From contig CDMY01000887.1 in the NCBI GenBank assembly GCA_001179505.1, forward strand, positions 62,001 to 126,000: DNA of 64,000 nucleotides, written 5' to 3'. The notes under the pieces are model-generated. The model made no database searches and was not told the DNA's origin. It saw only the letters and a list, made by a program, of their open reading frames with translations. The stretch comes from Vitrella brassicaformis CCMP3155. Its lineage: Eukaryota > Protista > Chromerida. Made by a program: the position numbers and the translations under genes. Shown piece by piece: positions 27,707 to 42,861 of this stretch (position 1 is the first letter of the stretch; each line of letters starts with the position of its first letter).

Positions 27707-30700
27707 TCAGAAAGGCATCCGCAGGTTGGTCAGCAGCGGGCCGTCCGCATCGGCGAGGAACCTCGCGTCAGCAACTGTGGTGGTCAAGTTGGCCTTGGGG
27801 AGGGGGAGGGGGAGGGAGGCGGGCTCGTTCTCGTTCTGCTCGTTCTCAGTCTCGTCATGCTCATGCAGCTCTCGCCTTTGCCGCCTTCTTCGCCTGGCCT
27901 CATGGTCGTAGAACTCATAGAAATCCACCCAGCTACACACACAGACAGACAGACAGACAGACACATCGCTTCAGTGTGCCCGTCGTCTCTCTCCTCCCAC
28001 CGTCCCACCGTCCCACCGTCCCACGCACACACGCCGCCGACTGACTCACCCGTGTCCATAGTGAGCCCATGCGCTCGGCTGGGTGAAGCGGTCCTCTTTG
28101 CTGAGCTTGCAAGCCGTCCGCGTGACCTCATAGTCGAACGACAGACACCACGCTTGCTCCACACACCTGTCCGCGCACGCCTCGACCGTCAAGTCGTTGA
28201 TCGTCTCCTCGTTGAAACCCCGCAGGGCGAACCCCGGATACCGCACAAAGTACCACAGGTTGGAATCCGCCGGAACAACGGGCTTCAATGGGTCGGGCCG
28301 ACTGCCTGGCGGTGGGCTGCCCGGGGGGTCTCCTTCGCCTGGTGGGGGCTCTCCGGGTGTGGGGGTGGGTGTGGGGGTGGTGCTGCTGCCGCCGCCGTCC
28401 TGCTGTGGCGTGACGGTGACCTGCACGGCCATGTCGGCGAAGGCCACGTCGTTGCCGTGCATGCTGAAGAAGATCAGGCCCGTAAGCACGACGTCGTCCT
28501 TCATCTCGGGGGTGGGATTGATCTCATATGCGACCTGGGCCGAGTGCCCGGGCGGGATCTCGCCCGAGGCTATGCTCTGACTGTCGCCTGTGACCGTGAC
28601 GGTATCGTCGCTGTCGCTGGTGGAGCTGAACTTGAACCAGGTGTCGACTTCGCTGGATTGGGGGTGGAAGGTGACGGCTGAGCGGGAGGTGGGGAAGCTC
28701 CCGGATGGCTCGAAGTCGACCTTCATGGTGCCGTCGAGGCTTGCCAGACCAACCTGACATCCAACAGCCATCCATCCATCCATCAGCGGCAACCCCTGTG
28801 TGTGTGTGTGTGTGTGTGCGTGCATTGAAGGGTGGGTGGTGGGGGAAGGGTATGTGTCAGTCAGTCAGTCACCTGCGCCCAGGTGCCCCCGACGCCCCCT
28901 GACCCCTCCATCTCGTTGTAGAAGAAATGGATGGCCCCCGTCTTCTCCAACACCACCTGGAAGGTAAAATGCGACGCCGGGTCGCCTGAACACACACACG
29001 CGCACACACACACACACACACATACAGATGTGCAGACTCCTGTGGGGCTGTCTGTCCTTGTGTCAGCTGTCCGTCGGCTGATTGACTGACTAGAACTAAC
29101 CGAAGTGCCTGAGGTCTTGCCACTGGACGACCACCTCGCTCTCCGTGTGGTAGACCCATACATCGGCGTCCGCCTTGCCGACCAGCGTCAGGTCACACCA
29201 GTACGGAGCTATCACCTACACACACACACCCACACGCACACACACACACACACACTTGTGTCCGTGTCAGACTCTCCTTGTGCCATTATTCATGGGCTCA
29301 GTCGGTGTCAGTGGCTGGGATTGTCCCGACCGCCTTGAGTCCATCGGCTTTGCCGAGGCCTGGTTCGTTTGCCCGGTCGGCTTCGAAGTCCCATGCCTTG
29401 AATGTGATGAAGCCGTTGGTGCAGATGTACATGACCTCATGGTCCTCGCCCCAAAAGTGAAAGGGGAAGGGCAGCATCACCTCAGCCACGGCGTCGTCCT
29501 CATCTGTCCAGTCCACACACACAACACACACACACCGACAGACAGGTCGCTCCATTCTCCTCCTTGTTGTTTTGTTTGCCGGGGAGGGAGGGCGTTCTCA
29601 CTTGAGAGCATGAGCCTCCGCTGCTCGGCCATTTTCCCGGTGGAAGCGTCGTTCCATGCGAAGGCGGGCATGGCCTCCTTCCTGTCGTTGCGGGCGATGA
29701 AGTAGCCGTCGACGGTGGCGTTCATCTGCCGGTAGAGGGCCCTGTTGGTGGGCACGAACATCATTTCGTAAGTCATCGCGGTGCCCCCGCCGTTGGTGAT
29801 CTGACCATGGGCGACACACACACACACACACACACAGGCACACGCCACGCACAATGAATGTGTGTGTGTTGGGTGAGAGGTGAGAGGTGAGAGGCCCACC
29901 TCGATATGTGTGTCGTCGGAGGCACTCATAGAGCCGGTCTCGTGGACGACTGCGGGCGGGCTGAGGGTCGTGTTGGTGGTCACGGCGTGCAGCTCGATCT
30001 GGTAGGCCTTGCCGCCCTCCTCGTTGGTCTCAATTTCCAACGTCGTCGTGATCTCGGCAGCCTGCATCCGGAAGAATCCCATCTGACACACACACACACA
30101 CACACATACATGCACCTCGGTCAACCCACCCATCCCATCTAATGAATGCGTGTGTCGCGTGTCCCGTAGCACCCATAGCACCTGAACGCCGTCGACTTCG
30201 TTGCCGGGCTCAACCATGATCGTTGTCGCTGGCATCGAGGGGTTGGAGATAAAGTCCATGTAGTTGCCACCCGTGAATCGCAGGACCTTCACCTCGAGCG
30301 TCTCACCCCCGTCGTTGGCAAACGAGATGTACTTGACGAACATTGGCACACCAGTGGCGCCACTCCCCAGATCCATATACGCGGGCAGGTCACGCAACTG
30401 CGGGCCGGTGTTGCCGTCAGGGGGCTGAGAGGGCGAGGGCGTTTCTGTGGGGGGCGCTCCTGTCCTGGGAGTGCCTGTCGTTGCTGGTGGCTCTGTCGAC
30501 GGCAGTGGCACCTCGGGGGGCTGCTGTGTGGGGGCTACGGGGGGGTCAGTGGGCGGCGCCATGCTTGGCGCGGCTGTGGGCGGCGCCATGCTTGGCGCGG
30601 CTGTGGGCGGCGCCATGCTTGGCGCGGCTGTGGGCGGTTGTGTTGGGGCCGTTGTGGGTGGGGCGCCCGTCTGCTGGATGTCCGCTCGCACTGTGACGTT

Positions 30701-33700
30701 GACCGCGGCTTGGTCGACCTCACTGCCCGCGGCGTTCTCGGCCGATACCACGATCTGCGCGCTGATCGAGGGAGAAGCGTACACACACACACACACACAC
30801 ACGCGGGCATAGACCTGGGTGGGTGAGAATGGGTGGGCAAAAATGAGACTCACACGTATGTGCCGTCCATTTTGGGGCTGAGTATGACGGGGATGTTGAT
30901 CTGCCCGCCCGCGGGAAGGTCTGAGGGCACGTTGAAGGTGTCCAAGATAGAGATCCACCCGCCGCTGCTGTAGCTGTCGGCCACCGAGGCCGCCGCGTCG
31001 AGCAGGCCCTCCGACACGCACTTGCCCTCCAGCTGATCGAGCTTTTGCACCGTATCCATGATCAGCTTCTTCACCTGATCAGACAGGACCCATAAGTGGG
31101 GGATGGGGCTGTGTTGTGTTGTCGCATTCATTCTTTCTTACGTCTGGGTAGTTGAGTGAGGGGTTGACCTCCCAGACAAGTGCCACGGCGCCCGCGACGT
31201 GTGGGGCGGCCATGCTGGTGCCGCTGAGGTCGGTGTACTGATTTCCAGGCTGGCAGCTGGCGATGTTCACACCTGCATCGGTAGGTAGAGCGAGGGACGA
31301 TGCGATGCGCGGGTTTTAGCCTGTCTCTCTCTCTCTCTCTCTCTCTCGATGTGTGGCTACCAGGCGCGCAGATGTCGACTTTGGTCGCCCCATAGTTGGT
31401 GAACTGTGGCGTCACGCCACTCTCTGCTAAGGCCATCACCTGACCCACACACACGCGTCATCGAGACGGACTTGCCAGCCAATAGGCGCGTGTGTGTGGC
31501 CATGTATTGTATTGTATGCGCCCATACCGAGATGACGCACTCGCCGTCATAGTTGGCAGGGTAGAATGCCGTTGCGTCGTTGTCCGTGCCCTCGTTGCCC
31601 GCCGCCGCCACAAACATGATGTCGCTGTTGCAGCACTCCTGCACAGCAGTTTCCATCGCCTGAAGACACATCACATCCGTCCCATTGCACATGTGGCAGG
31701 GCGGCTGGTTGGTTGCTCACGGCCGAGGATCCGCCGCCTCCCCAGCTGTTGTTGAGAATCTTGGCCTTCTTCGTAATGGCATACTCGACCGCCTTCACGG
31801 CGTTGCTCACCGACCCCTGCACACGCACAGCCAAGGCACCACACCCACATACAGGGAGAGTGACCTATTCGGTTATGGTGTTCACGGCAAGCTCAGTGGC
31901 GTACCGATCCCGATGCTTCCAGGAACTTGAGGGCCATTATCTTGGTGCTCGAGCCGTACGCCACACCCACAATTCCCTTGGCGTTGCCGCCCTCAGCCTG
32001 AGATACACACACACACACATATATATACACACCCACACATTCAAACAGAGAGAGAGAGAGAGAGAACGAGATGGATGGATGGGTGGGTGGATGGGTGGGT
32101 GCAGACGGTGTCAGTGCGCATGGAATGCTTTGCAAGTCACCATGATGGTGCCAGCGCAGTGGGTTCCGTGTCCCTCGTCGTCGGCAGGGTCGTTATCGTC
32201 GTTGGCAAAGTCCCAGCCGTACACGTCATCCACGAAACCGTTACCTGTGCCACAGACGAAGAAGAAACAAGGCTAGGTCGATGTCCCATTCCCTCCTCGT
32301 CCGTCTGGCATACCATCATCATCCTCGCCGTTGTCCGGGATCTCATCCGGGTTGACCCACATCACGTTCTGGAGGTCCTCATGGTTGTAGTCCACACCCG
32401 TGTCTATAACACCCACAATGTGCCCCGTCCCCTGCGCCCTCTCTCCCGACAGCGTCCCGCCCAGAGTGCTGTCCACTATGCTCCACGCTTCCGTCGCCTG
32501 GATGTCAATCCCGGTGTTGGCCTGGTTCTGTAGGCCCCACAGCGACCCGTCCGCGAACAGGGGATCGTTCGGCTCTTTCCCAGTGTACTGGTCTGCATCA
32601 GCAACAGGAGCCAGCTGGCCCCCCACCCCGCCGCACGAGAGATTGCCGCTGATGCAGTCGTCGAGAAGGGGCACCTGGTGGTCGACCTGGTAGAGCTGGA
32701 TGTAGCTGTCGGCTGTGGGGGGCGGGCCTAACGAGAGGCTCGACGCGTTCTGCTCTGACGAGGGGATGCTCGTGGACTGCTTCTTGAGCCGGGGAGGCGT
32801 GCTCTTGGGGGGCGTCTTGGGCGACGCGGCGCCCACGTGTCGGTACTGCAGGGCCTGCAAATCGCGGTCGGGCTGCCGAAGGTTCTCCTTTACCCAGGGA
32901 GAAAACGCATAAGTAGGCCTGCAGCACAACACGAATCCATCCGTCCACAGTCATCAAAATCCATGACCTCTTCCTTCCTCTGGTGCGCATGGCATGGCAT
33001 GGCATGGATGGATGTCTGTGGAGTGAGTGGACTTGTCACTCCTCTCCTCACGTAGTATCGACGGGTTCCAGTCCGCCGCGGCCATGTGAGGCGATGCGCA
33101 CGGTCTGGTCGAATTCGCAGAAGACGACGTCTTCGCTGCTGCAGGCGGCCTTGACGAAGGCCTTAACGTCCCCATCCGTGGCGAAATCCATGATGTCCAT
33201 GTTGAGCCGCTTCAGGTACTTGTAGTTCTGCACCGTCGACGCGTAGCTCGGCGCGTTAAGGCCGCCCGCCAGATCTGTTTGCTGCCTCAACGCCTGCACA
33301 CACAGAGAGGGAGGGTTGCTCCTGATTGAATGCTCTGGTCTTGATGACCTACGTCATCGATGCTGGTGCGCCCGGCGGTGGGGTCGTCCCTCCACTTGAC
33401 CATGAACCGCTCGCCCTTCTTCTGGTCCACCAATGCCACCATGTCATCCGGGCTCAGCTGGCTCCTCATGTCGGGCGCCCCGCTGCCCTTGGGCTGGTAC
33501 GCCGCATTCGCCACCGACGCGTAGATGTTGAGCGCCTCGGCCTCGTTGTTGACCACACTCACTTCGACCGTCTTCTCCTCGCCCGATATGATGTCCTCAT
33601 CGAACCCTTCCGGGGTGACTGCGATTCCTCCCGCTTGACCAGCCGTGAGGACCGAAGACTGCAGAAGGAGGGTGGCGAGCAGTAGAAAGGCGGCAGGGAG

Positions 33701-33715
33701 CCAGCGTGGCCTCAT
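27707..33715 (-). CDS. Secreted modular subtilisin (S8): Ig-like, prodomain, S8, Pro/Thr linker, Ig/ASH-like, NIDO-like, PAN/apple (multi-exon)
   Basis: Signal peptide MRPRWLPAAFLLLATLLLQSSVLTA, with an in-frame upstream ATG at 33823 as an alternative start. The triad is intact (VIDTG, GHGTHCAG, GTSMAAPHVAG) with oxyanion AAGN. Also present: LPFPFHFWGEDHEVMYICTNGFITF (NIDO-like) and EACADRCVEQAWCLSFDY...CKLS (PAN). Confidence 0.92.
30549..30637 (-). repeat. 27-bp coding tandem repeat x3 (TAAPSMAPP)
   Basis: gtgggcggcgccatgcttggcgcggct three times plus a partial unit, within the subtilase linker. Confidence 0.95.
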
Positions 33716-33947
33716 GGCTTGTGTGTTTGGGGTGTTTGGGGTGTTTGGGGTGTCTGGGGCTGCCTTTGCTTCTGCTGTTTCTGCAGTGTCCGGCGCGCGT
33801 GTGGGTGCTGGGGAGGTCGCCATGCTTTGTAGCGTCCGCGAGCGCCTCGCCCGCAGGTTCCTTCCCCTTTTTCACCCTCCCCAGTTTGTTGGTGTACTAT
33901 TATTTCGTCCGCCGCCGTTGATTGAGTCGCAGGCGCAAGAAAGAAAC

Positions 33948-34602
33948 ATGAATGCGCTGGACGCCACTTCCCCAGCCACGCTCTCCGTGGACAAGAGGGC
34001 AATCACAAAAGTGTCCCTCGTCATCCTTCCTCTCGACATTACCGGGAAGAAGCTGTGTCTGTACTTCCACAAGGAAGGGCCTCACCAGGGCAAGTATCTC
34101 GGGGTGTGGGGCAGCGCAACCAAGGGCGAGACTGTCCTGCAGGCCGCACACCGCATCCTGAAGGACGAGGCTTCGCTTGAGTCTGACGCAATCGTGGTGG
34201 TTGGGATGAACAGCTTCATCCAGCCTGTGGATGATGAAGGGTCAGTGGAGGAGTGGCTGGAGTACTCAGTGGTCGCCAGGGGCGTCAGGGGCACACCAAA
34301 GTCGACGTCTGCACTGGAGCCATCCTGGGTCGACGTCGAGGTGGGTGAGGCGACACATCCCCAGTGGCCATGGAGGAGGTACATACGTGCGTGTGTCTCG
34401 TGGCAATCAGGCCATTCCCTACGACAAGATGTGGGCTGACGACTTCCACTGGTTCCCGCCGGCTCTGCAGGGCACCCCGTTTGTCGCCGTGTGGCAGTTC
34501 GTCAACTCACAAGACAACAAGATGGAGCAATACGACATCCGACACGTGGCACAAGAGGAGCTGCAGCGCCGGACTGCAGCAGCTGAGCAGCTCTTCCTGT
34601 AA
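33948..34602 (+). CDS. MTH1/NUDT1-like Nudix protein with degenerate Nudix box (2 exons)
   Basis: GKYLGVWGSATKGETVLQAAHRILKDEASL, then the MTH1-type C-terminal EPSWVDVE|AIPYDKMWADDFHWFP. Confidence 0.8.
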
Positions 34603-34916
34603 GGGAGTGCGTTCGTGCGTGCATGTGTGTGTGCGTCATGGACCGTTCGCTGAGTGAGGCAAAAATTCAACCCGTCATTTGTCGTCGCGCATCGTGTCTG
34701 TCTCTCTGTCTGTCATTGGTGCCTGCCTGCCTGCCGGTCTCTCTGTCCGTCCGTGAGGGCATGCAGCCGTCCGTCCATCTACTTGACAGATAAAATACAG
34801 AGGCATGGATGCCATCCATGCCATGCGACTGATATCTACGAGTAGTGAGTGAGTGACCGGAAAAACAGTCAATCCATCTCTTCCTCCTCCTCCCCCTCCA
34901 TCTTCATTCACTTCAC

Positions 34917-36957
34917 CTATGCCGTTGTGGCCGCGGCCTCTGCACCCAAAGCACCCACACACACATACACGAGGGAGGGACAGTCAGACAGACACTACAC
35001 ATCCCTGCCCTGTGTGGGTGGTGTGTGTTGGGTACGGTACCTTCTTTCTTGGGCATCGCTGCCTCGAGGTTTGCATTGGCGAAATCCCAGTTGACGAGGT
35101 TCCAGAAAGCTGCACACACCGCCCCGCAACCAGAAAGGACACAGGGTGAGGCTGTGTCTGTTTGATTGTGCTGTGGGTAGTGTGTCACCCCCCACCCACC
35201 GTCAAGGAAGGCTGGCCGTGCGTTCCTGTAGTCGATGTAGTAGGCATGCTCCCACACAGAGACGCACAGAATGGGTGTGCCAAGGTTCTCCCTGCCAACC
35301 AACCAACACGACAAAGCATATATTATCTTGTTCGTTGCCCATCCCATCCCGCCCTGTCTGTCTGTCTCTCTCTCTCACTTGACGGGGTTTGACGCGTCGT
35401 GTGTGCCGACCACATCCAGCTTGCCGTCCTTCAGCACTACCCACGCCCAGCCGGAGCCGAAGTGGTCTGAGCAAGGAGGGAGGCAAGAACCAAACACAAG
35501 AACCAAACACACACACACACACACATCAGAAACCGCTGCCCTCCCTCCCTCCTTTCGGTGTGCCTGTCTTACTGGCGGCGACTTCGTTGAACTTGGTCTT
35601 GAGTGCGTCGAAGCCGCCGAAGTCCTCCTGGATCTTCTCGGCTATCGCGCCGCGGGGCAGGCCGCCACCGTTGTAGATCTGAGTGGGTGGACACACAGCG
35701 GCGTGGGTCTGCGCTGTGCTGTGCTGTGTGTGGTGTGGTGTGGTGTGGCTGTCTGTACCTTTGATGTGATGGATTTCCAGTAGAAGTTGTGGTTCCAGAC
35801 TTGGGCTGAAGGAAGGCACACATGATATATTGTGTGCGCGCGCCTCTGTGTGTGTATGTGTGTGTGTGTGTGTGTGTCTGTGGCGGACCAGCATTGTTGA
35901 AGACGGCACCGTCGGCAGTCTTGACCAGCTCTGCAGAGAGGAAGTATAACACAGGCAAAACGACAGATGAGGCGTGCCTTCTCCTTGTCATCAATCTGAC
36001 CCTCGAGGGATTTGCTGGCGATCGCTGGGGTCTCCTTGGCAAGTTCTGCACCACCGACAACACACCCACACACAATGAATGCACTATTCTCGTCGTTCGC
36101 TGCTTCACATCGCAAGCCCTGACTGACCGTTGAGCGTCCGCACGTAATTGGCGTGGTGTTTGGAGTACTGGTACTCGACGTTGTCCTTGCTAAGATATGG
36201 GGCGAGCGTGTCCACACCCTGTCCGTAGATGCAGCCACTCACTCATGCGTACGCCCATCGCCGAGCGGTTGTGTAAGCGTCTGTCTGTCTGACTGACTGT
36301 TTCTGCTTCTTACGAAGTCCAGCTGTGGGAGTGAGAACGGCTTTGCATCGATGAGGTCATCGACGCCCCACTCGGCATAGATCTCTTCGGTGCCCTTCCT
36401 CGCGATGCGCTTGCTCGCCACCTCCTGCAGCTCATCGTAGCTCAACGGAATGCCCTGAAACCCAGCCTGAACACACACACACACAAACAGAGATGCAATG
36501 CTCCCAGCGCTCCCCTCCCTGAACCGTGCCGGGTAGGTCTGCATCATCACATGTATCACCTGGTCGGCGTCCCATGGCGACCAGAGCAGGTAGACCTTCT
36601 CACCGGCCTTCTCCTTCTCCGCAGCGATCTTCTTGTTCTCCTCATCGATCGCCGGGGTGGACCAGGCGAACCCGCCTGCGCCCATCTGAGGGGTCAGACG
36701 TGACCGTGATGCGACAGAGGAGGTGGAAGAGGCCCTCAGCCGGGCGGGCGAGACGAAGGCATCCAGCCGAGCGCCAAGCGCTAAAGCAGATCAAATCAGA
36801 CACACAGACAAGCAGAGAGGTACACATGAGTGTGCGCGTGAATCATCAGCAGTGTGAGGCCTTACAGGCAGGCAGGCAGGAAGGCAATGTGTTATGTGTT
36901 TGTTCACTCACCGTTTGAGAGGAGCGCGAAAGCGCACACAGCGATGATGGACTTCAT
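34917..36957 (-). CDS. Plastid-targeted Fe-superoxide dismutase homolog lacking two metal ligands (multi-exon)
   Basis: Presequence [15 protein letters not shown]|[36 protein letters not shown] domain: PFSLPQLDF|[25 protein letters not shown]...FNNA|[10 protein letters not shown]...HFGSGWAW...THDASNP...[18 protein letters not shown]...[13 protein letters not shown]. Confidence 0.93.
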
Positions 36958-37127
36958 TGCCAAGCAACCACACTGCCGGGCCACCCACTAACCCCTCAAA
37001 GCCTCTGCTGCCTCTGCCTTGCAGATCTCCACGTCAGCTCCGTTTACACCTCATTGGTAAGCTCGCAGATTGGCTGCTCCGAGAGGCCCTGCTTCCTGCT
37101 TCCCTACCAGCTCTGTAAGGCTCCAGG
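36958..37127. promoter_or_regulatory. 170-bp divergent promoter region between the SOD homolog and LHC
   Basis: Lies between two opposed ATGs. Contains CCACGTCAG (37029-37037) and two ATTGG/CCAAT boxes (37053, 37069). Function is inferred. Confidence 0.5.
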
Positions 37128-38249
37128 ATGAAGGTGTTCGCCGCCGTCACCCTTGCCCTTCTTGCGGTGGTCGCCGCGGAAGACGCATCAGGTCACTCAG
37201 ATCAACGCTGAGGACGGGATGAAGAAGGAAGGAGGGCAATGCAGCAAGGCCAGATGCACAAAAGACGGCAACGAATTCAGTGCAAGAATGTTTTCTTTGT
37301 TTGGTGTCTGGTGTTGTGGTGTGCAGCCTTTGTTCCCAATGCTAGCCCTCTCCTGAAGAGTCCCAAGAGATCTCTCAGGGTGAGCGAGGCCGTCACACAT
37401 ACGCTTCATCACTTTCCCGTGCACGGCCGTCCGTGTGTCTGGCAATGTCCATGCAACATGCAGACAACCCCCTCGATGAAGCTGGGCACCAACGCGCAGG
37501 GCTTGATCGGCAGCGACCTGGAGTGGCCCGAGTTCGACCCTTTGGGTTTCACCAACAACATCTCCGACGAGACCCTCGAGTGGTACCGGGCAGCCGAACT
37601 CAAACACGGCCGGGTCTGCATGCTCGCCGCTCTCGGACAGCTCGTCCAGTCCTTCTGGCACCTGCCAGGTCAGCTCGGCGAGCGAAGGATCAGAAGGGTC
37701 GACTGCGATTGCTCTCATGTGTCCGTGCTGCGTTCATCAGATCCGTCAGGTGTGTTTGACTCGACTGACTCGTCGTTCGGAGCCTTCAACAAGGTGGTGT
37801 CGGAGCGCCCCTGGGCGGCCATCCAGATCCTGCTGGCCATCTTTGCCGTGGAGGTGCTGGGGGCCAAGACGCAGGCCAAGCCCGGCCAGGCACCGGGCGA
37901 CCTCGACTTCGACCCATTCAAAGTCAGATCGGACGACCCTGAGGTGAGTGAGTGGAGCCGAAGATGCACGACACACGCAGAACTTGGTGCACGTGCTGTA
38001 TTGTGTGTCGTGTGTGGTCGGACAGATCTGGGAGGCCACTCAGCTGCGTGAGCTGAAGAACGGCAGGCTGGCGATGATCGGCATCACCGCCATGCTCGTC
38101 CAGGAAGCGGTGAGTCGATGGGCAGACGGACGATTGGATGGATTGCACACGACACACACACACACACTGGCTGGGCCGTTTGCTTTTGTCTCTATCAGAT
38201 CAGCGGCAAGGGCGTGATTGCGCAGTGGCAGGGCTTGGGGCAGTCGTGA
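37128..38249 (+). CDS. Light-harvesting chlorophyll-carotenoid antenna protein (LHC family, multi-exon)
   Basis: Bipartite leader [21 protein letters not shown]|[38 protein letters not shown] and [12 protein letters not shown] are present, ending [16 protein letters not shown]. Confidence 0.97.
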
Positions 38250-38525
38250 GCCTGACTGTCCTTATTGCATGGATCCGAGGTGTGTTTTTGGTTGCAACAA
38301 TCAATGGCCGACGGGACGGACGGATGCGCAATTTTTACGCGTCAGCAAGACAGATAGATGATCACAGAGCTGTCTGTTCTGTAGTGAGAGATCGGATAAT
38401 GACGATGTGAATAAGCGTGACTGACGTGTAATTGAAAACTCTGGCAGTGAAGATCAGGCCGTCCTCCGTGTGACAGAGGCGATCGGAATCTCGCTGCTCG
38501 CTAAGCTTGCATTCATCTCGAGAAA

Positions 38526-39982: not shown

Positions 39983-42861
39983 TCACCTATATCGAGTTAC
40001 TTGATAGTTTGTCGCGGATGTGAGGTGACTATCGATCCGTCTCTGCCTGCCTGCATCTGTCCATTTATCTGCAGAGCCGTTCCCATATCGACTCTGGTGT
40101 CCTGTTGGCCACCAGCTTCCCAGTACCGGGCGAGAGAGACGGCACAAATATGCAGCCCTCAAGCTCTCTGCCCACCGCATCATCTCCTTTTTCCTGCTTG
40201 TCTGCCGTCGCTCGGCGTCTGCATAAAGTCGGTCGATTGCGGACGCATCTCGGTGATCTGCGGGCTGAATGTGCATCTCGCGAGGTCTGCTGAGCTGCCG
40301 AAGCCGGAGGACGCCAGCACAATGTGGCTTCTTGCTCATCACTGCCGGCTGTGCAGTATCGCAATGATCTCGCCTCTGCAGCTGTTTCTTGTTCGACAGC
40401 AGTTTCTTTTCAACCTGATAATCAACCGTCCACTCAATCAATACACACCCATACATCAGATTTGTGTCTGTCTGTCTGTCTGTCTGCTTCTACGTACCTC
40501 GTCTCTTCTGCACGCAAAAGTCTTGGAACAAACACTTGCGAGGCGCGAGGGCATGGAATGAGGAATCGTGAGAGCTTCTCCTTCCAGAATCCGCCGTGTG
40601 TATATTCAACACAATGCCCGTGTGGAGGAGAGCCGTAGTCAGGCATGTCTCCACAGAGAGTAGTGGAGAAGGACGGCCGTCTCTTCTCGTCCCTGGAATG
40701 AGCCACAAGGGGCGGCCTGGTCATAAATTTTTGTCACGTCACCGAAGACGACCTGAACGATGTGAAGGACAGCAGACGAAATATGTGGAGAATACCGATG
40801 GACATAGATGCTTGTTTGGCTTTTTGTGCTGTACATGCAGACCTCGAGGTCCATGACGATCGTGTCGTGGTCTCTCTTGACGGGTGCGAATGCCTGGGCG
40901 TCAGGAAAAATGACCCGATTGCCGTCAGCCTGAGCAGAAAGGAGGGAGGGACGGAGGGAGGGAACACACACACACACACACACACACAAACAAAGGGATG
41001 CAACGAGTGAGTGCATGTGTGTTTGACAGGTGGTGCGTCAGCCTGAGCAGAAAGGAGGGAGGGACGGAGGGAGGGTGACCGGCTTCGAATTTTTTTTTTA
41101 ACAAAGGGATGCAACGAGTGAGTGCATGTGTGTTTGACAGGTGGTGCACGCTTACATTCTCAACCCTCGCGACCAATTCGCTGGCGATCATGAGTTCGTG
41201 TGGCTGCCGGCGCTCCTTGATGCTGTCACAGTCGGCCCAAAGCCGGTCAGCCTGGGGCTTGATGGCCACAAAGTGGTCCATCGCCTGCTGACNNNNNNNN
41301 NNNNNNNNNNNNNNNNNNNNNNNNNNNNNNNNNNNNNNNNNNNNNNNNNNNNNNNNNNNNNNNNNNNNNNNNNNNNNNNNNNNNNNNNNNNNNNNNNNNN
41401 NNNNNNNNNNNNNNNNNNNNNNNNNNNNNNNNNNNNNNNNNNNNNNNNNNNNNNNNNNNNNNNNNNNNNNNNNNNNNNNNNNNNNNNNNNNNNNNNNNNN
41501 NNNNNNNNNNNNNNNNNNNNNNNNNNNNNNNNNNNNNNNNNNNNNNNNNNNNNNNNNNNNNNNNNNNNNNNNNNNNNNNNNNNNNNNNNNNNGCTGACCG
41601 GCTTCGAACACCGCCCTCTCCCGCAGCAACATGGCCACCACCGCCCCCCGCTCCCGCTCCCAGTGTGCCGTTAGAAGTTCGATCTTCTCGGCCACCGACT
41701 TCCCCTTAATCTACACGCACAGACCATGGCACATACACAGAGAAACAGACAAGAAGATAACGTCACTGGTCGCACTCCTTCCCCTCGTGTGTCTGCTTAC
41801 TTACCCCTCCCAACTCGGTGCACGGCTTCTTCAGCTTCTCAAAGTGCTGCGTGCGCGATGTCGGCCATGTCGAGCCACTCGTAGTCCTCAGTGGCCTTCC
41901 GCTTGGCCCTCTCGACCCTCTCGAAGCCATCGCCCTCAACTCGACGACCTGGTACCCCATGGCGATGTTTGTGGCGTGTTTGCCACAGTCCGCCTTGTAC
42001 CATGGGACGGCCGCCCCTGGCTGCGGGGGCTGATGGCCGGAATACGTCGAGCCGAGGGACACCACATGCCCACGTACACGCATATGTCCATTGCATGTAT
42101 GTTGTGTTGTGTGAGCACCAACCCGTCTGCTCGACCAGAAGTCATGCGAAAGAGGTGTTTGGGCAGCGTGAGGCTCCCCATGGCCATGTTGGTGGCCTTG
42201 AAGCCGCACGACAGGTCGTAGCAGCCACCCTTCTTGCGCTGCTCCTGGGACCAGAACCGCACCTCCCGCTCGCCGACGGTGAGGACGATGTGGTCGCCCT
42301 CCCGCCGGTGGTCGCGGACGTTGGGGTTGGCCTCGCACACGGCGTCGATGGCCTTCAACGTGTTGATCTCGCCTGCATGCAATGCAATCGAACACACACA
42401 AAGTGAAACTCATCTCAGTCACGTGTGCATCCTTTCGTGTGTGGGTGTGGGTGTGTGTTTGTGTACCTGTGGTGAGTACGGCTGGGGCGTACACACGAGC
42501 GTTGGGCGGCCCAGAGGTCCGGCTGGGGACTGCCCATACCCTCTTCCTCCCCCCTCCCGCCCAGACCCTCAGAGGCCGTCCCCTCTCCGCCCTCTCCCAT
42601 GGCTGGGCTGACTGCAGACACACAGAAATCCACACACAGGTCACGCATGCGCCTCTCTTCATTGGTGGAGAGATGCAGAGCACAGCGTCCATCCCATCCC
42701 GCTCCCTCCTGCTGACTTCACTTACGTGTTGGCACCTTGACGGGCGTCCGACGTACCGCGGCGTTGTCGGGAGTGCGGAACATCTCCTCAGGCCATCCGT
42801 CGCCGATTCGCCCGGACACTGCAGCCGGGCGCTGCGGTGTGCCGACAGCCCCGCCCTCCAT
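39983..42861 (-). CDS. Hypothetical multi-exon protein (spans a probably spurious gap)
   Basis: Exon-like frames bounded by GT/AG: GEINTLKAIDAVCEANPNV...GCYDLSCGF, WYKADCGKHATNIAMGY, AEKIELLTAHWERE...FEAGQ/QAMDHF. Both ends are uncertain and I recognise no domain. Confidence 0.55.
40924..41147. repeat. ~112-bp imperfect tandem duplication with a swapped middle
   Basis: Block A (gtcagcctgagcagaaaggagggagggacggagg) at ~40924 and 41037. Block B (acaaagggatgcaacgagtgagtgcatgtgtgtttgacaggtggtgc) at ~40990 and 41101. Confidence 0.85.
41293..41592. other. Assembly gap (300 N), probably a 6-bp overlap rather than missing sequence
   Basis: The left flank ends gctgac and the right flank begins gctgac. 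Confidence 0.9.

What the first reader, a model, noticed from the sequence alone, without database searches (positions are those of the whole stretch)
34917..36957. Plastid-targeted pseudo-Fe-SOD: two of four metal ligands replaced, plus a ~70-aa N-terminal extension
Seen: aligned to E. coli FeSOD numbering, ligand His26 is Gln (EY-Q-YSKHH, codon CAG at 36168-36170) and ligand Asp156 is Ser (CV-S-VWEHAY, codon TCT at 35258-35260). His73, His160, Tyr34, Gln69 and the dimer-bridging Glu159/Tyr163 are kept, the frame is intact across ~10 exons, and the rest closely follows apicomplexan SODs ([13 protein letters not shown]). A unique mature extension ([18 protein letters not shown]...[11 protein letters not shown]) precedes the SOD fold. 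Established: H26/H73/D156/H160 are the invariant Fe/Mn ligands, and from memory chromerid photosystem I has been reported to carry Fe-SODs as stable subunits. Inference: this is a metal-free or low-activity structural SOD that docks, probably via the extension, on the thylakoid or PSI, or partners an active SOD in a heterodimer.
Basis: partly seen in the sequence, partly recalled or inferred. Interest (0 to 1): 0.82.

Follow-up and report, generated by a model that had tools for sequence, protein, structure and literature searches.

The report
Iron-less SOD anchor of photosystem I
This gene of the coral-associated alga Vitrella brassicaformis encodes a superoxide dismutase look-alike that has lost two of its four metal-binding residues and carries the same N-terminal tether that, in its relative Chromera velia, fastens a dismutase pair onto photosystem I; the kind of protein was published in 2025, and the different ligand losses seen here were not mentioned in the papers I could read.

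Summary
A 12-exon, all GT-AG gene on the minus strand (34917-36957) encodes a 340-aa protein. It has a signal peptide, a Ser/Arg-rich transit peptide, an 84-aa extension and a complete Fe/Mn-SOD fold. Ligand His26 is Gln (CAG 36168-36170) and ligand Asp156 is Ser (TCT 35258-35260). His73, His160, His30, Tyr34, Gln69, Glu159 and Tyr163 are kept. All 119 other FeSODs compared have H/H/D/H. Spliced transcript contigs carry both codons unchanged.

The protein is very probably Vbra_10461 (its monoisotopic mass, 37353.8 Da, matches the published 37353 Da). That SOD co-migrated with Vitrella PSI in 2017. Its extension is not unique. An exhaustive search of 1.84 billion proteins found one credible relative, Chromera velia PsaSOD1. 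The 2025 cryo-EM structure (PDB 9HYU) shows PsaSOD1 as an Fe-less subunit whose N-terminal linker anchors the active PsaSOD2 to PSI.

Two points are absent from the papers' main texts. First, the two species lost different ligands (Vitrella H26Q and D156S; Chromera H73T), so the losses were independent and came after recruitment to PSI. Second, the 2017 proposal of an FeSOD homodimer on Vitrella PSI would then mean a dead dimer. An active partner, possibly Vbra_13639, should be sought.

The parts
34917..36957 (-). Complete CDS of the PsaSOD1-type gene (very probably Vbra_10461 / CEM36361.1). Twelve exons: 36957-36912, 36780-36560, 36466-36314, 36218-36128, 36045-36001, 35930-35889, 35805-35759, 35678-35573, 35466-35379, 35291-35200, 35109-35041, 34939-34917.
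   Evidence: All introns are GT..AG. Transcript contigs L001 and L002 are identical to the spliced CDS. Junctions are seen in runs X1, X2 and X9.
34651..37032 (-). Transcribed span: 5'UTR of at least 75 nt (36958-37032) and 3'UTR of about 266 nt (34916-34651).
   Evidence: blastn of L001 and L002 on the window.
36773..36957 (-). Signal peptide, residues 1-18 ([18 protein letters not shown]), spanning intron 1.
   Evidence: Hydrophobic N-terminus read from the sequence. SignalP gave 18 aa for Vbra_10461 in the supplement of PMC5643376. An alternative cleavage after ..ARLDA would place Phe at +1.
36686..36772 (-). Ser/Arg-rich transit-peptide-like stretch, residues 19-47.
   Evidence: Composition read from the sequence. 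A bipartite presequence is reported in the supplement of PMC5643376. The cleavage site is not determined.
36341..36685 (-). N-terminal linker, residues 48-131 (exon 2 and exon 3), homologous to the PSI-anchoring linker of C. velia PsaSOD1.
   Evidence: PDB 9hyu_1 matches at E 3.3e-19 for the fragment. The exhaustive HMMER search gave one credible hit, P0121, at E 7.2e-9. Identity is 38.6% over 83 aligned positions. The AF2 model predicts helices in the linker at pLDDT 50-78.
35768..36337 (-). Sod_Fe_N alpha-hairpin domain, residues 133-212.
   Evidence: Pfam PF00081, 81 bits.
35072..35657 (-). Sod_Fe_C domain, residues 223-323.
   Evidence: Pfam PF02777, 126 bits.
36168..36170 (-). Codon CAG = Gln157, at the position of metal ligand His26.
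   Evidence: Unchanged in RNA contigs.
35258..35260 (-). Codon TCT = Ser291, at the position of metal ligand Asp156. It is at least two base changes from GAY.
   Evidence: Unchanged in RNA contigs.
35789..35791 (-). Codon CAC = His205, the retained ligand His73. This is the position that is Thr in C. velia PsaSOD1.
35246..35248 (-). Codon CAT = His295, the retained ligand His160.
35658..35764 (-). Residues 214-222 (SKIYNGGGL, across intron 7). They contain a 3-4 residue insertion shared with C. velia PsaSOD1 and absent from the canonical FeSODs aligned.
   Evidence: Alignment A1. A 3-residue gap appears in the apicomplexan FeSODs at the same place.

Best explanation
The gene encodes the Vitrella brassicaformis orthologue of the photosystem I subunit PsaSOD1. 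It is made in the cytosol and imported into the complex plastid by a signal peptide plus transit peptide. Its FeSOD fold can no longer hold iron properly, because the axial ligand His26 is Gln and the anionic ligand Asp156 is Ser. The fold and the dimer-interface motif ([11 protein letters not shown]) are intact, so it should still pair with a second FeSOD chain. The 84-residue N-terminal linker lies on the stromal face of PSI (PsaD, PsaL, PsaB and PsaM in Chromera) and tethers the dimer there. Superoxide made by PSI would be dismutated by the active partner, most likely a second plastid-targeted FeSOD. Vbra_13639 is the candidate, taken from the literature only. Shown here: the gene model, its expression, the two ligand replacements, the linker homology, and a likely identity with the protein found on Vitrella PSI by mass spectrometry (mass match only). 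Inferred: loss of iron, docking through the linker, and the identity of the partner. The ligands lost in Vitrella (H26, D156) and in Chromera (H73) do not overlap. The common ancestor therefore most parsimoniously had all four, so tethering to PSI came first and catalytic decay followed independently in each lineage.
For: Searches give an intact, spliced, expressed gene. Searches show a canonical FeSOD fold (SOD domain mostly pLDDT above 90; TM 0.95, normalised to the target, against Plasmodium FeSOD). Searches give Q and S at two ligand columns that are invariant in 119 of 119 other FeSODs. Searches show the linker is shared with C. velia PsaSOD1 (P0121 = PDB 9hyu_1): BLASTP gives 37% identity over 285 residues at E 2e-60, and it is the one credible hit among 1.84 billion representatives. 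One search shows that P0121's only two N-X-S/T sequons are at N76 and N202, the glycosylated residues named in PMC12830998, so P0121 is the published PsaSOD1. One search gives a mass of 37353.84 Da against 37353 Da for the PSI-associated Vbra_10461. PMC12830998 aligned V. brassicaformis CEM36361.1:51-331 and reported a 34% identical linker. In one search the tree that holds the two proteins together scores 2.2 log-likelihood units higher than the free tree and is not rejected (p-AU 0.67). Searches show a shared small insertion. In one search, 15 of 87 columns that are invariant in the six canonical FeSODs of alignment A1 are changed, and 11 of those lie at residues 139-159 or 289-291, next to the two lost ligands.
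Against: No metal content, activity or structure exists for the Vitrella protein. Only one SOD spot was identified on Vitrella PSI in 2017, so a heterodimer partner is unproven there. The SOD-domain tree cannot place C. velia PsaSOD1 because its branch is 7.84 changes per site. A published tree groups Vbra_10461 with Cvel_3019 (PsaSOD2) and apicomplexans, not with Cvel_7136. The second-sphere residues His30, Tyr34 and Gln69 are all conserved, unlike in Chromera PsaSOD1; this could mean a recent loss or a residual function of the site. The identity with Vbra_10461 rests on the mass match and the residue range, because I could not read the database entry.
Confidence: 0.85

Rival explanations
1. 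Dead homodimer. The protein binds PSI as a homodimer, as proposed for Vitrella in 2017, with no active partner. The PSI-bound SOD module in Vitrella would then have no dismutase activity and would serve a purely structural or other non-enzymatic role.
For: Only one SOD (Vbra_10461) was identified among the Vitrella PSI spots, and the authors proposed a homodimer. The dimer-interface motif is intact.
Against: The Vitrella gels smeared and few peptides were recovered, so a roughly 24-kDa partner among the FCP bands could have been missed. Vitrella encodes a second FeSOD with a bipartite presequence, Vbra_13639 (SP 16 aa, TargetP 25), similar to Cvel_3019 (17 and 24). In Chromera the homologous subunit pairs with an active PsaSOD2.
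Confidence: 0.2
2. Still an enzyme. Gln157 and Ser291 take over metal coordination, or the site binds another metal, and the protein keeps useful SOD or another redox activity.
For: His73, His160, His30, Tyr34 and Gln69 are all conserved. The SOD domain is far less diverged than Chromera PsaSOD1: branch 0.83 against 7.84, and 58% against 37% mean identity to canonical FeSODs.
Against: The four ligands are invariant in 119 of 119 FeSODs compared. From general knowledge of Fe/Mn-SOD chemistry, loss of the only anionic ligand should weaken metal binding and shift the redox tuning. The Asp to Ser codon change needs at least two base changes, which argues for long release from the ligand constraint. 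Other substitutions cluster around the two lost ligands.
Confidence: 0.05
3. Not an orthologue of PsaSOD1. The linker was joined independently to different SOD paralogues, or Vitrella keeps the single ancestral linker-bearing SOD that duplicated into PsaSOD1 and PsaSOD2 only in the Chromera lineage.
For: A published tree groups Vbra_10461 with Cvel_3019 rather than Cvel_7136. The last 15 residues of the window's linker also resemble the pre-domain segment of C. velia PsaSOD2 (9hyu_2).
Against: The linker and the first SOD residues lie in one exon, so no shuffling boundary is visible. The two proteins share a small insertion. The constrained clade is not rejected and scores slightly better. This rival changes the history but not the function, and independent ligand loss holds under it too.
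Confidence: 0.2

Closest known systems
Chromera velia PsaSOD1 (Cvel_7136; PDB 9HYU chain 1; Yuan et al., Nat Commun 2025, PMC12830998; also bioRxiv 10.1101/2025.07.05.663305)
   Same: FeSOD fold with an incomplete metal site. Homologous N-terminal linker (about 38% identity). Bipartite plastid presequence. Association with PSI. A small insertion shared in the loop between the two SOD domains.
   Different: Different ligands are lost: Vitrella H26Q and D156S, Chromera H73T (with H30Y and Q69M as well). The Vitrella SOD domain is much less diverged. It has no N-X-S/T sequon at all, whereas Chromera is glycosylated at N76 and N202. The mature linker is shorter (about 84 against about 100 residues). 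No C-terminal Pro/Lys-rich tail.
Chromera velia PsaSOD2 (Cvel_3019; PDB 9HYU chain 2)
   Same: Plastid FeSOD bound to PSI. It is closer to the window protein than PsaSOD1 is: Foldseek gives 41% identity over 218 aligned columns for PsaSOD2, against 37% over 284 columns (linker included) for PsaSOD1. It shares a short pre-domain segment with the window protein.
   Different: PsaSOD2 keeps all four ligands and binds Fe. It lacks the long linker.
Plant PEP-associated FeSODs PAP9/FSD2 and PAP4/FSD3 (PDB 8QMA, 9EPC, 8XZV)
   Same: A pair of plastid FeSOD paralogues that form a heterocomplex and are built into a large plastid machine as stable subunits.
   Different: The host complex is the plastid RNA polymerase, not PSI. 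They have no homologous linker and match more weakly (about 145-158 bits). I did not examine their ligand status here.
Canonical dimeric FeSODs of apicomplexans and bacteria (PDB 2AWP, 4YET, 2BPI, 1ISA)
   Same: Best sequence and fold matches: 52-55% identity by Foldseek, TM 0.91-0.95 normalised to the target.
   Different: They are soluble and active, have the full H/H/D/H site, and have no N-terminal linker.

Membership tests
Fe/Mn superoxide dismutase superfamily (Pfam Sod_Fe_N + Sod_Fe_C) | Both Pfam domains score above the gathering threshold. | tested here: met
   PF00081 scores 81.1 bits against a cut-off of 27. PF02777 scores 126 bits against a cut-off of 20.9.
Fe/Mn superoxide dismutase superfamily (Pfam Sod_Fe_N + Sod_Fe_C) | Two-domain alpha-hairpin plus alpha/beta fold. 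| tested here: met
   The AF2 model has pLDDT mostly above 90 in the SOD domain. Foldseek gives TM 0.95 (normalised to the target) and rmsd 1.6 A against P. knowlesi FeSOD.
Catalytically competent Fe-SOD (enzyme) | Four metal ligands: His26, His73, Asp156 and His160. | tested here: not met
   The window has Gln, His, Ser, His. All 119 other FeSODs compared have H/H/D/H.
Catalytically competent Fe-SOD (enzyme) | Second-sphere and dimer-bridge residues His30, Tyr34, Gln69, Glu159 and Tyr163. | tested here: met
   All are retained.
Catalytically competent Fe-SOD (enzyme) | Bound Fe and superoxide dismutation. | not testable with these tools
   This needs ICP-MS and an activity assay.
PsaSOD1 (non-catalytic SOD anchor subunit of chromerid PSI) | N-terminal linker homologous to that of C. 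velia PsaSOD1. | tested here: met
   9hyu_1 matches at E 3.3e-19 for the fragment. P0121 is the one credible hit among 1.84 billion representatives, at E 7.2e-9. BLASTP is collinear over 285 residues.
PsaSOD1 (non-catalytic SOD anchor subunit of chromerid PSI) | Defective metal site. | tested here: met
   Two ligands are replaced, at positions different from the H73T of Chromera.
PsaSOD1 (non-catalytic SOD anchor subunit of chromerid PSI) | Bipartite plastid-targeting presequence. | tested here: inconclusive
   The sequence shows a hydrophobic N-terminus followed by a Ser/Arg-rich stretch. No predictor was run here. The supplement of PMC5643376 reports SignalP 18 aa and TargetP 14 for Vbra_10461.
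PsaSOD1 (non-catalytic SOD anchor subunit of chromerid PSI) | Stable physical association with PSI. | not testable with these tools
   From the literature: Vbra_10461 co-migrates with Vitrella PSI and stays bound after SDS (PMC5643376). The link to the window is the mass match of 37353.84 against 37353 Da.
PsaSOD1 (non-catalytic SOD anchor subunit of chromerid PSI) | Heterodimer with an active PsaSOD2. | not tested
   The sequences of Cvel_3019 and Vbra_13639 could not be fetched, and no multimer prediction tool was available.
PsaSOD1 (non-catalytic SOD anchor subunit of chromerid PSI) | N-glycosylation at the two sites seen in Chromera. This is an accessory feature and probably not defining. 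| tested here: not met
   The window protein has no N-X-S/T sequon anywhere. P0121 has exactly N76 and N202.

The most novel reading that the evidence does not exclude
Vitrella PSI carries this iron-less SOD as a homodimer with no active partner. A catalytically dead SOD module would then be kept on photosystem I for a non-enzymatic role. Together with the independent H73T loss in Chromera, the tether to PSI, and not dismutation by this chain, would be what selection has maintained.
Probability: 0.15. Interest if true: 0.6.

Novelty: new member of a known kind. Interest (0 to 1): 0.38.

Why it matters
The PSI-SOD supercomplex of chromerids is a recent structural finding. It is proposed to turn PSI into a 'Mehler machine' that sends electrons back to oxygen. 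This report shows that the second known chromerid has the same tethered pseudo-SOD, but inactivated at different ligands. That dates the tether before the loss of catalysis. It gives a natural pair for studying how an enzyme becomes a scaffold. It also corrects the working assumption that Vitrella PSI carries an active FeSOD homodimer. The practical consequence is a concrete search for the active partner in Vitrella PSI preparations.

Tried and rejected
1. The word-index search with the linker alone found only the query's own cluster. I therefore ran the exhaustive search. Its two other hits, P0122 (1600 aa, EF-hand-like repeats) and P0123 (908 aa, tandem repeats), have six short stretches each. 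I take them for repeat-inflated chance matches.

2. I tried to fetch C. velia PsaSOD2 through the 56 residues shown. No relative was found in metagenome contigs.

3. I tried to find Vitrella FeSOD paralogues through the SOD domain. It returned 80 environmental FeSOD loci (46-56% identity), none from the samples that hold the Vitrella transcripts. None was used further. One of them (L043) comes from an assembly labelled 'human gut metagenome'; it is an FeSOD match on a 10-kb contig and I did not take it for human DNA.

4. The SOD-domain tree could not test orthology, because the Chromera PsaSOD1 branch is 7.84 changes per site. Only the AU test was informative.

5. I checked whether the divergent neighbour LHC gene matches a PSI antenna chain of 9HYU. 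No 9hyu chain is among its best 60 PDB matches, so I claim no functional link.

6. The supplement of PMC12830998 is not held as text. I could not see whether its Supplementary Fig. 8a displays the Vitrella ligand changes.

7. A pseudogene or assembly-error reading is rejected. The frame is intact, the DNA and RNA contigs agree, and expression is clear.

Full report
**Anatomy.** The minus strand between 36957 and 34917 holds a 12-exon gene whose introns (70-131 nt) all begin GT and end AG. The joined CDS is 1023 nt and 340 codons. The protein has these parts:
- a hydrophobic signal peptide (residues 1-18);
- a Ser/Arg-rich stretch typical of a transit peptide (19-47);
- an 84-residue extension (48-131);
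- the two Pfam domains of Fe/Mn superoxide dismutases, Sod_Fe_N (133-212) and Sod_Fe_C (223-323), both far above their cut-offs.

**The two odd residues.** The best solved relatives are apicomplexan FeSODs (Babesia 4YET, Plasmodium 2AWP, 2BPI and 2A03; E 1e-70 to 1e-73). In their alignments the window has 'EYQYSKHH' where they have 'xxHYxKHH', and 'CVSVWEH' where they have 'xCDxWEH'. The E. coli FeSOD chain (1ISA/2BKB, positions 2-39 shown) fixes the first of these as His26. The second sits in the D-V-W-E-H motif, Asp156 to His160 in the E. coli numbering, which I take from established knowledge. In an alignment with 51 FeSODs, and again with 119, the four ligand columns are H/H/D/H in every other sequence, and the window has Q/H/S/H. 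His30, Tyr34, Gln69, Glu159 and Tyr163 are kept. TCT is at least two base changes from an Asp codon.

**Expression and sequence accuracy.**
- Two transcript contigs from two JGI samples (L001, L002) contain the whole spliced CDS without a single mismatch, plus 75 nt of 5'UTR and about 266 nt of 3'UTR.
- Contigs of three further runs (X1, X2, X9) carry the spliced form with the same junctions and no differing letters. DNA run X4 carries the unspliced form.
- These runs may overlap with the JGI samples, so I count at least two studies, not five independent confirmations.

**Identity of the protein.**
- The monoisotopic mass of the 340-aa product is 37353.84 Da. Sobotka et al. 2017 list 'SOD, Vbra_10461, 37353 Da' among the proteins that co-migrate with Vitrella brassicaformis PSI, an association that survived SDS (PMC5643376 Table 2).
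- Their supplement gives Vbra_10461 a signal peptide of 18 aa.
- Yuan et al. 2025 aligned V. brassicaformis CEM36361.1 residues 51-331, a range that fits this protein.

**The extension is not unique.** A fragment holding the extension and the first part of the SOD fold hit PDB 9hyu chain 1 best, at E 3.3e-19, with the match starting at the very beginning of the extension. Entry 9HYU is the 1.84 A cryo-EM structure of C. velia PSI. The word-index search found nothing but the query itself. I therefore ran the exhaustive HMMER search of 1.84 billion representatives with the 84 residues alone. It returned one credible hit, P0121 (370 aa, E 7.2e-9), and two repeat proteins that I discount. P0121's only N-X-S/T sequons are at N76 and N202, the two glycosylated residues reported for PsaSOD1, so P0121 is that protein. 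The two proteins align collinearly over 285 residues (37% identity, E 2e-60; linker 38.6%, SOD domain 36%). They also share a 3-4 residue insertion between the two SOD domains that canonical FeSODs lack.

**What the Chromera homologue does.**
- Cryo-EM shows a PsaSOD1/PsaSOD2 heterodimer on the stromal PsaC/D/E side of PSI.
- PsaSOD2 binds Fe through three His and one Asp.
- PsaSOD1 has one His replaced by Thr and holds water instead of Fe.
[quoted passage not shown] - The paper notes that the linker is 34% identical in Vitrella. In the main text I could read, it says nothing about the Vitrella metal site. Its supplement is not held.

**What this window adds.** In my alignment Chromera PsaSOD1 has H/T/D/H (with H30Y and Q69M as well), and Vitrella has Q/H/S/H. 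[quoted passage not shown] By parsimony against an invariant outgroup, their common ancestor had the full site. The linker is shared. So tethering to PSI preceded loss of the metal site, and the site decayed independently in the two lineages. This holds whether the two are strict orthologues or Vitrella keeps a pre-duplication gene.

The Vitrella copy is far less diverged:
- its branch is 0.83 against 7.84 changes per site (median 0.15);
- its mean identity to six canonical FeSODs is 58% against 37%;
- 72 of 87 columns invariant in those six canonical FeSODs are kept, against 48 in Chromera.

Of its 15 changes at invariant columns, 11 lie at residues 139-159 or 289-291, next to the two lost ligands in the sequence. 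This fits relaxation of the active site with the fold and interface maintained.

**Orthology.** The domain tree cannot place the Chromera protein, because of its long branch. Forcing the two together gives a slightly higher likelihood and is not rejected (p-AU 0.67). A published tree instead puts Vbra_10461 with Cvel_3019 and apicomplexans. I regard this as unresolved and list it as a rival history.

**Structure.** An AF2 model built from a 53-sequence alignment has mean pLDDT 81.5. The SOD domain is mostly above 90, and the linker is at 50-78 with several helices. Foldseek ranks apicomplexan FeSODs first (TM 0.95, normalised to the target). Among the matches listed, 9hyu_1 is the only one whose alignment covers the linker (284 columns). 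Its rmsd is poor, as expected for a segment that is extended on PSI in the complex but free in the model.

**The open point: the partner.**
- The 2017 paper found one SOD on Vitrella PSI and proposed an FeSOD homodimer. With two ligands gone, such a dimer would be inactive.
- The same paper's supplement lists a second Vitrella FeSOD with a bipartite presequence, Vbra_13639 (SP 16 aa, TargetP 25), close to the values for Chromera PsaSOD2 (17 and 24). I propose it as the candidate active partner.
- This is inference from the literature. I could not fetch its sequence.
- The 2017 Vitrella gels smeared, so a missed 24-kDa subunit is plausible.

**Comparison with other systems.** Plant FSD2/PAP9 and FSD3/PAP4 are FeSOD paralogues built into the plastid RNA polymerase (PDB 8QMA, 9EPC, 8XZV). 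They are an analogous recruitment but not the same family branch.

**Verdict.** The kind of system has been published since 2025, and this protein was already known to sit on Vitrella PSI. What is new is modest: the Vitrella subunit is a pseudo-enzyme through different ligand losses, and this bears on the order of events and on the homodimer proposal.

Noticed in passing
window 37128-38250 (+): A light-harvesting (chlorophyll a/b-binding family) gene lies head-to-head with the SOD gene. Its ATG is at 37128, behind a signal-peptide-like start ([17 protein letters not shown]). Pfam Chloroa_b-bind matches at E 1.5e-21. The SOD mRNA 5' end (at or beyond 37032) is less than 100 bp from this ATG, so the two plastid-protein genes probably share a bidirectional promoter. 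Its best PDB matches are PSI antenna proteins of other algae (LHCI, VCPI-1, ACPI). No 9HYU chain is among the best 60.
   Followed up: partly
window 29480-33823 (-): Fragments of a subtilisin-like (Peptidase_S8) gene are split over exons. The D-T-G region lies around 32300-32430 and the 'AAAGNEG' region around 31560-31650. The Pfam hits are weak (E 2e-4 and 4e-3), each below the cut-off on its own. Downstream is a Pro/Thr/Ala-rich repeat (PPTAAPSMA x3) near 30450-30700.
   Followed up: partly
window 35714-35755, 36864-36887, 34717-34744: Short simple-sequence stretches inside introns and the 3'UTR (CCACA-type and CCTG-type) attract many loose ends and false joints from unrelated contigs, and they give depth spikes in the DNA run. 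They are low-complexity repeats dispersed in the genome. Many introns of the gene are AC/GT-microsatellite rich, in line with another note on this window (s1-242844).
   Followed up: no
L001 1099-2004 = window 34916-33941: Transcript contig L001 runs on from the SOD 3'UTR into the convergent neighbour gene on the + strand, with an intron at 34342-34408. The 3' ends of the two genes abut or overlap, or the assembler merged two transcripts.
   Followed up: no
window about 41000-41500: A run of N (an assembly gap) interrupts ORFs on both strands.
   Followed up: no
PDB 9hyu_2 residues 53-69 against window protein residues 117-131: The last part of the Vitrella linker ([15 protein letters not shown]) resembles the short pre-domain segment of Chromera PsaSOD2 (NVYEKMGVSTLVSGEEG). 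This hints that PsaSOD2 also descends from a linker-bearing ancestor.
   Followed up: no
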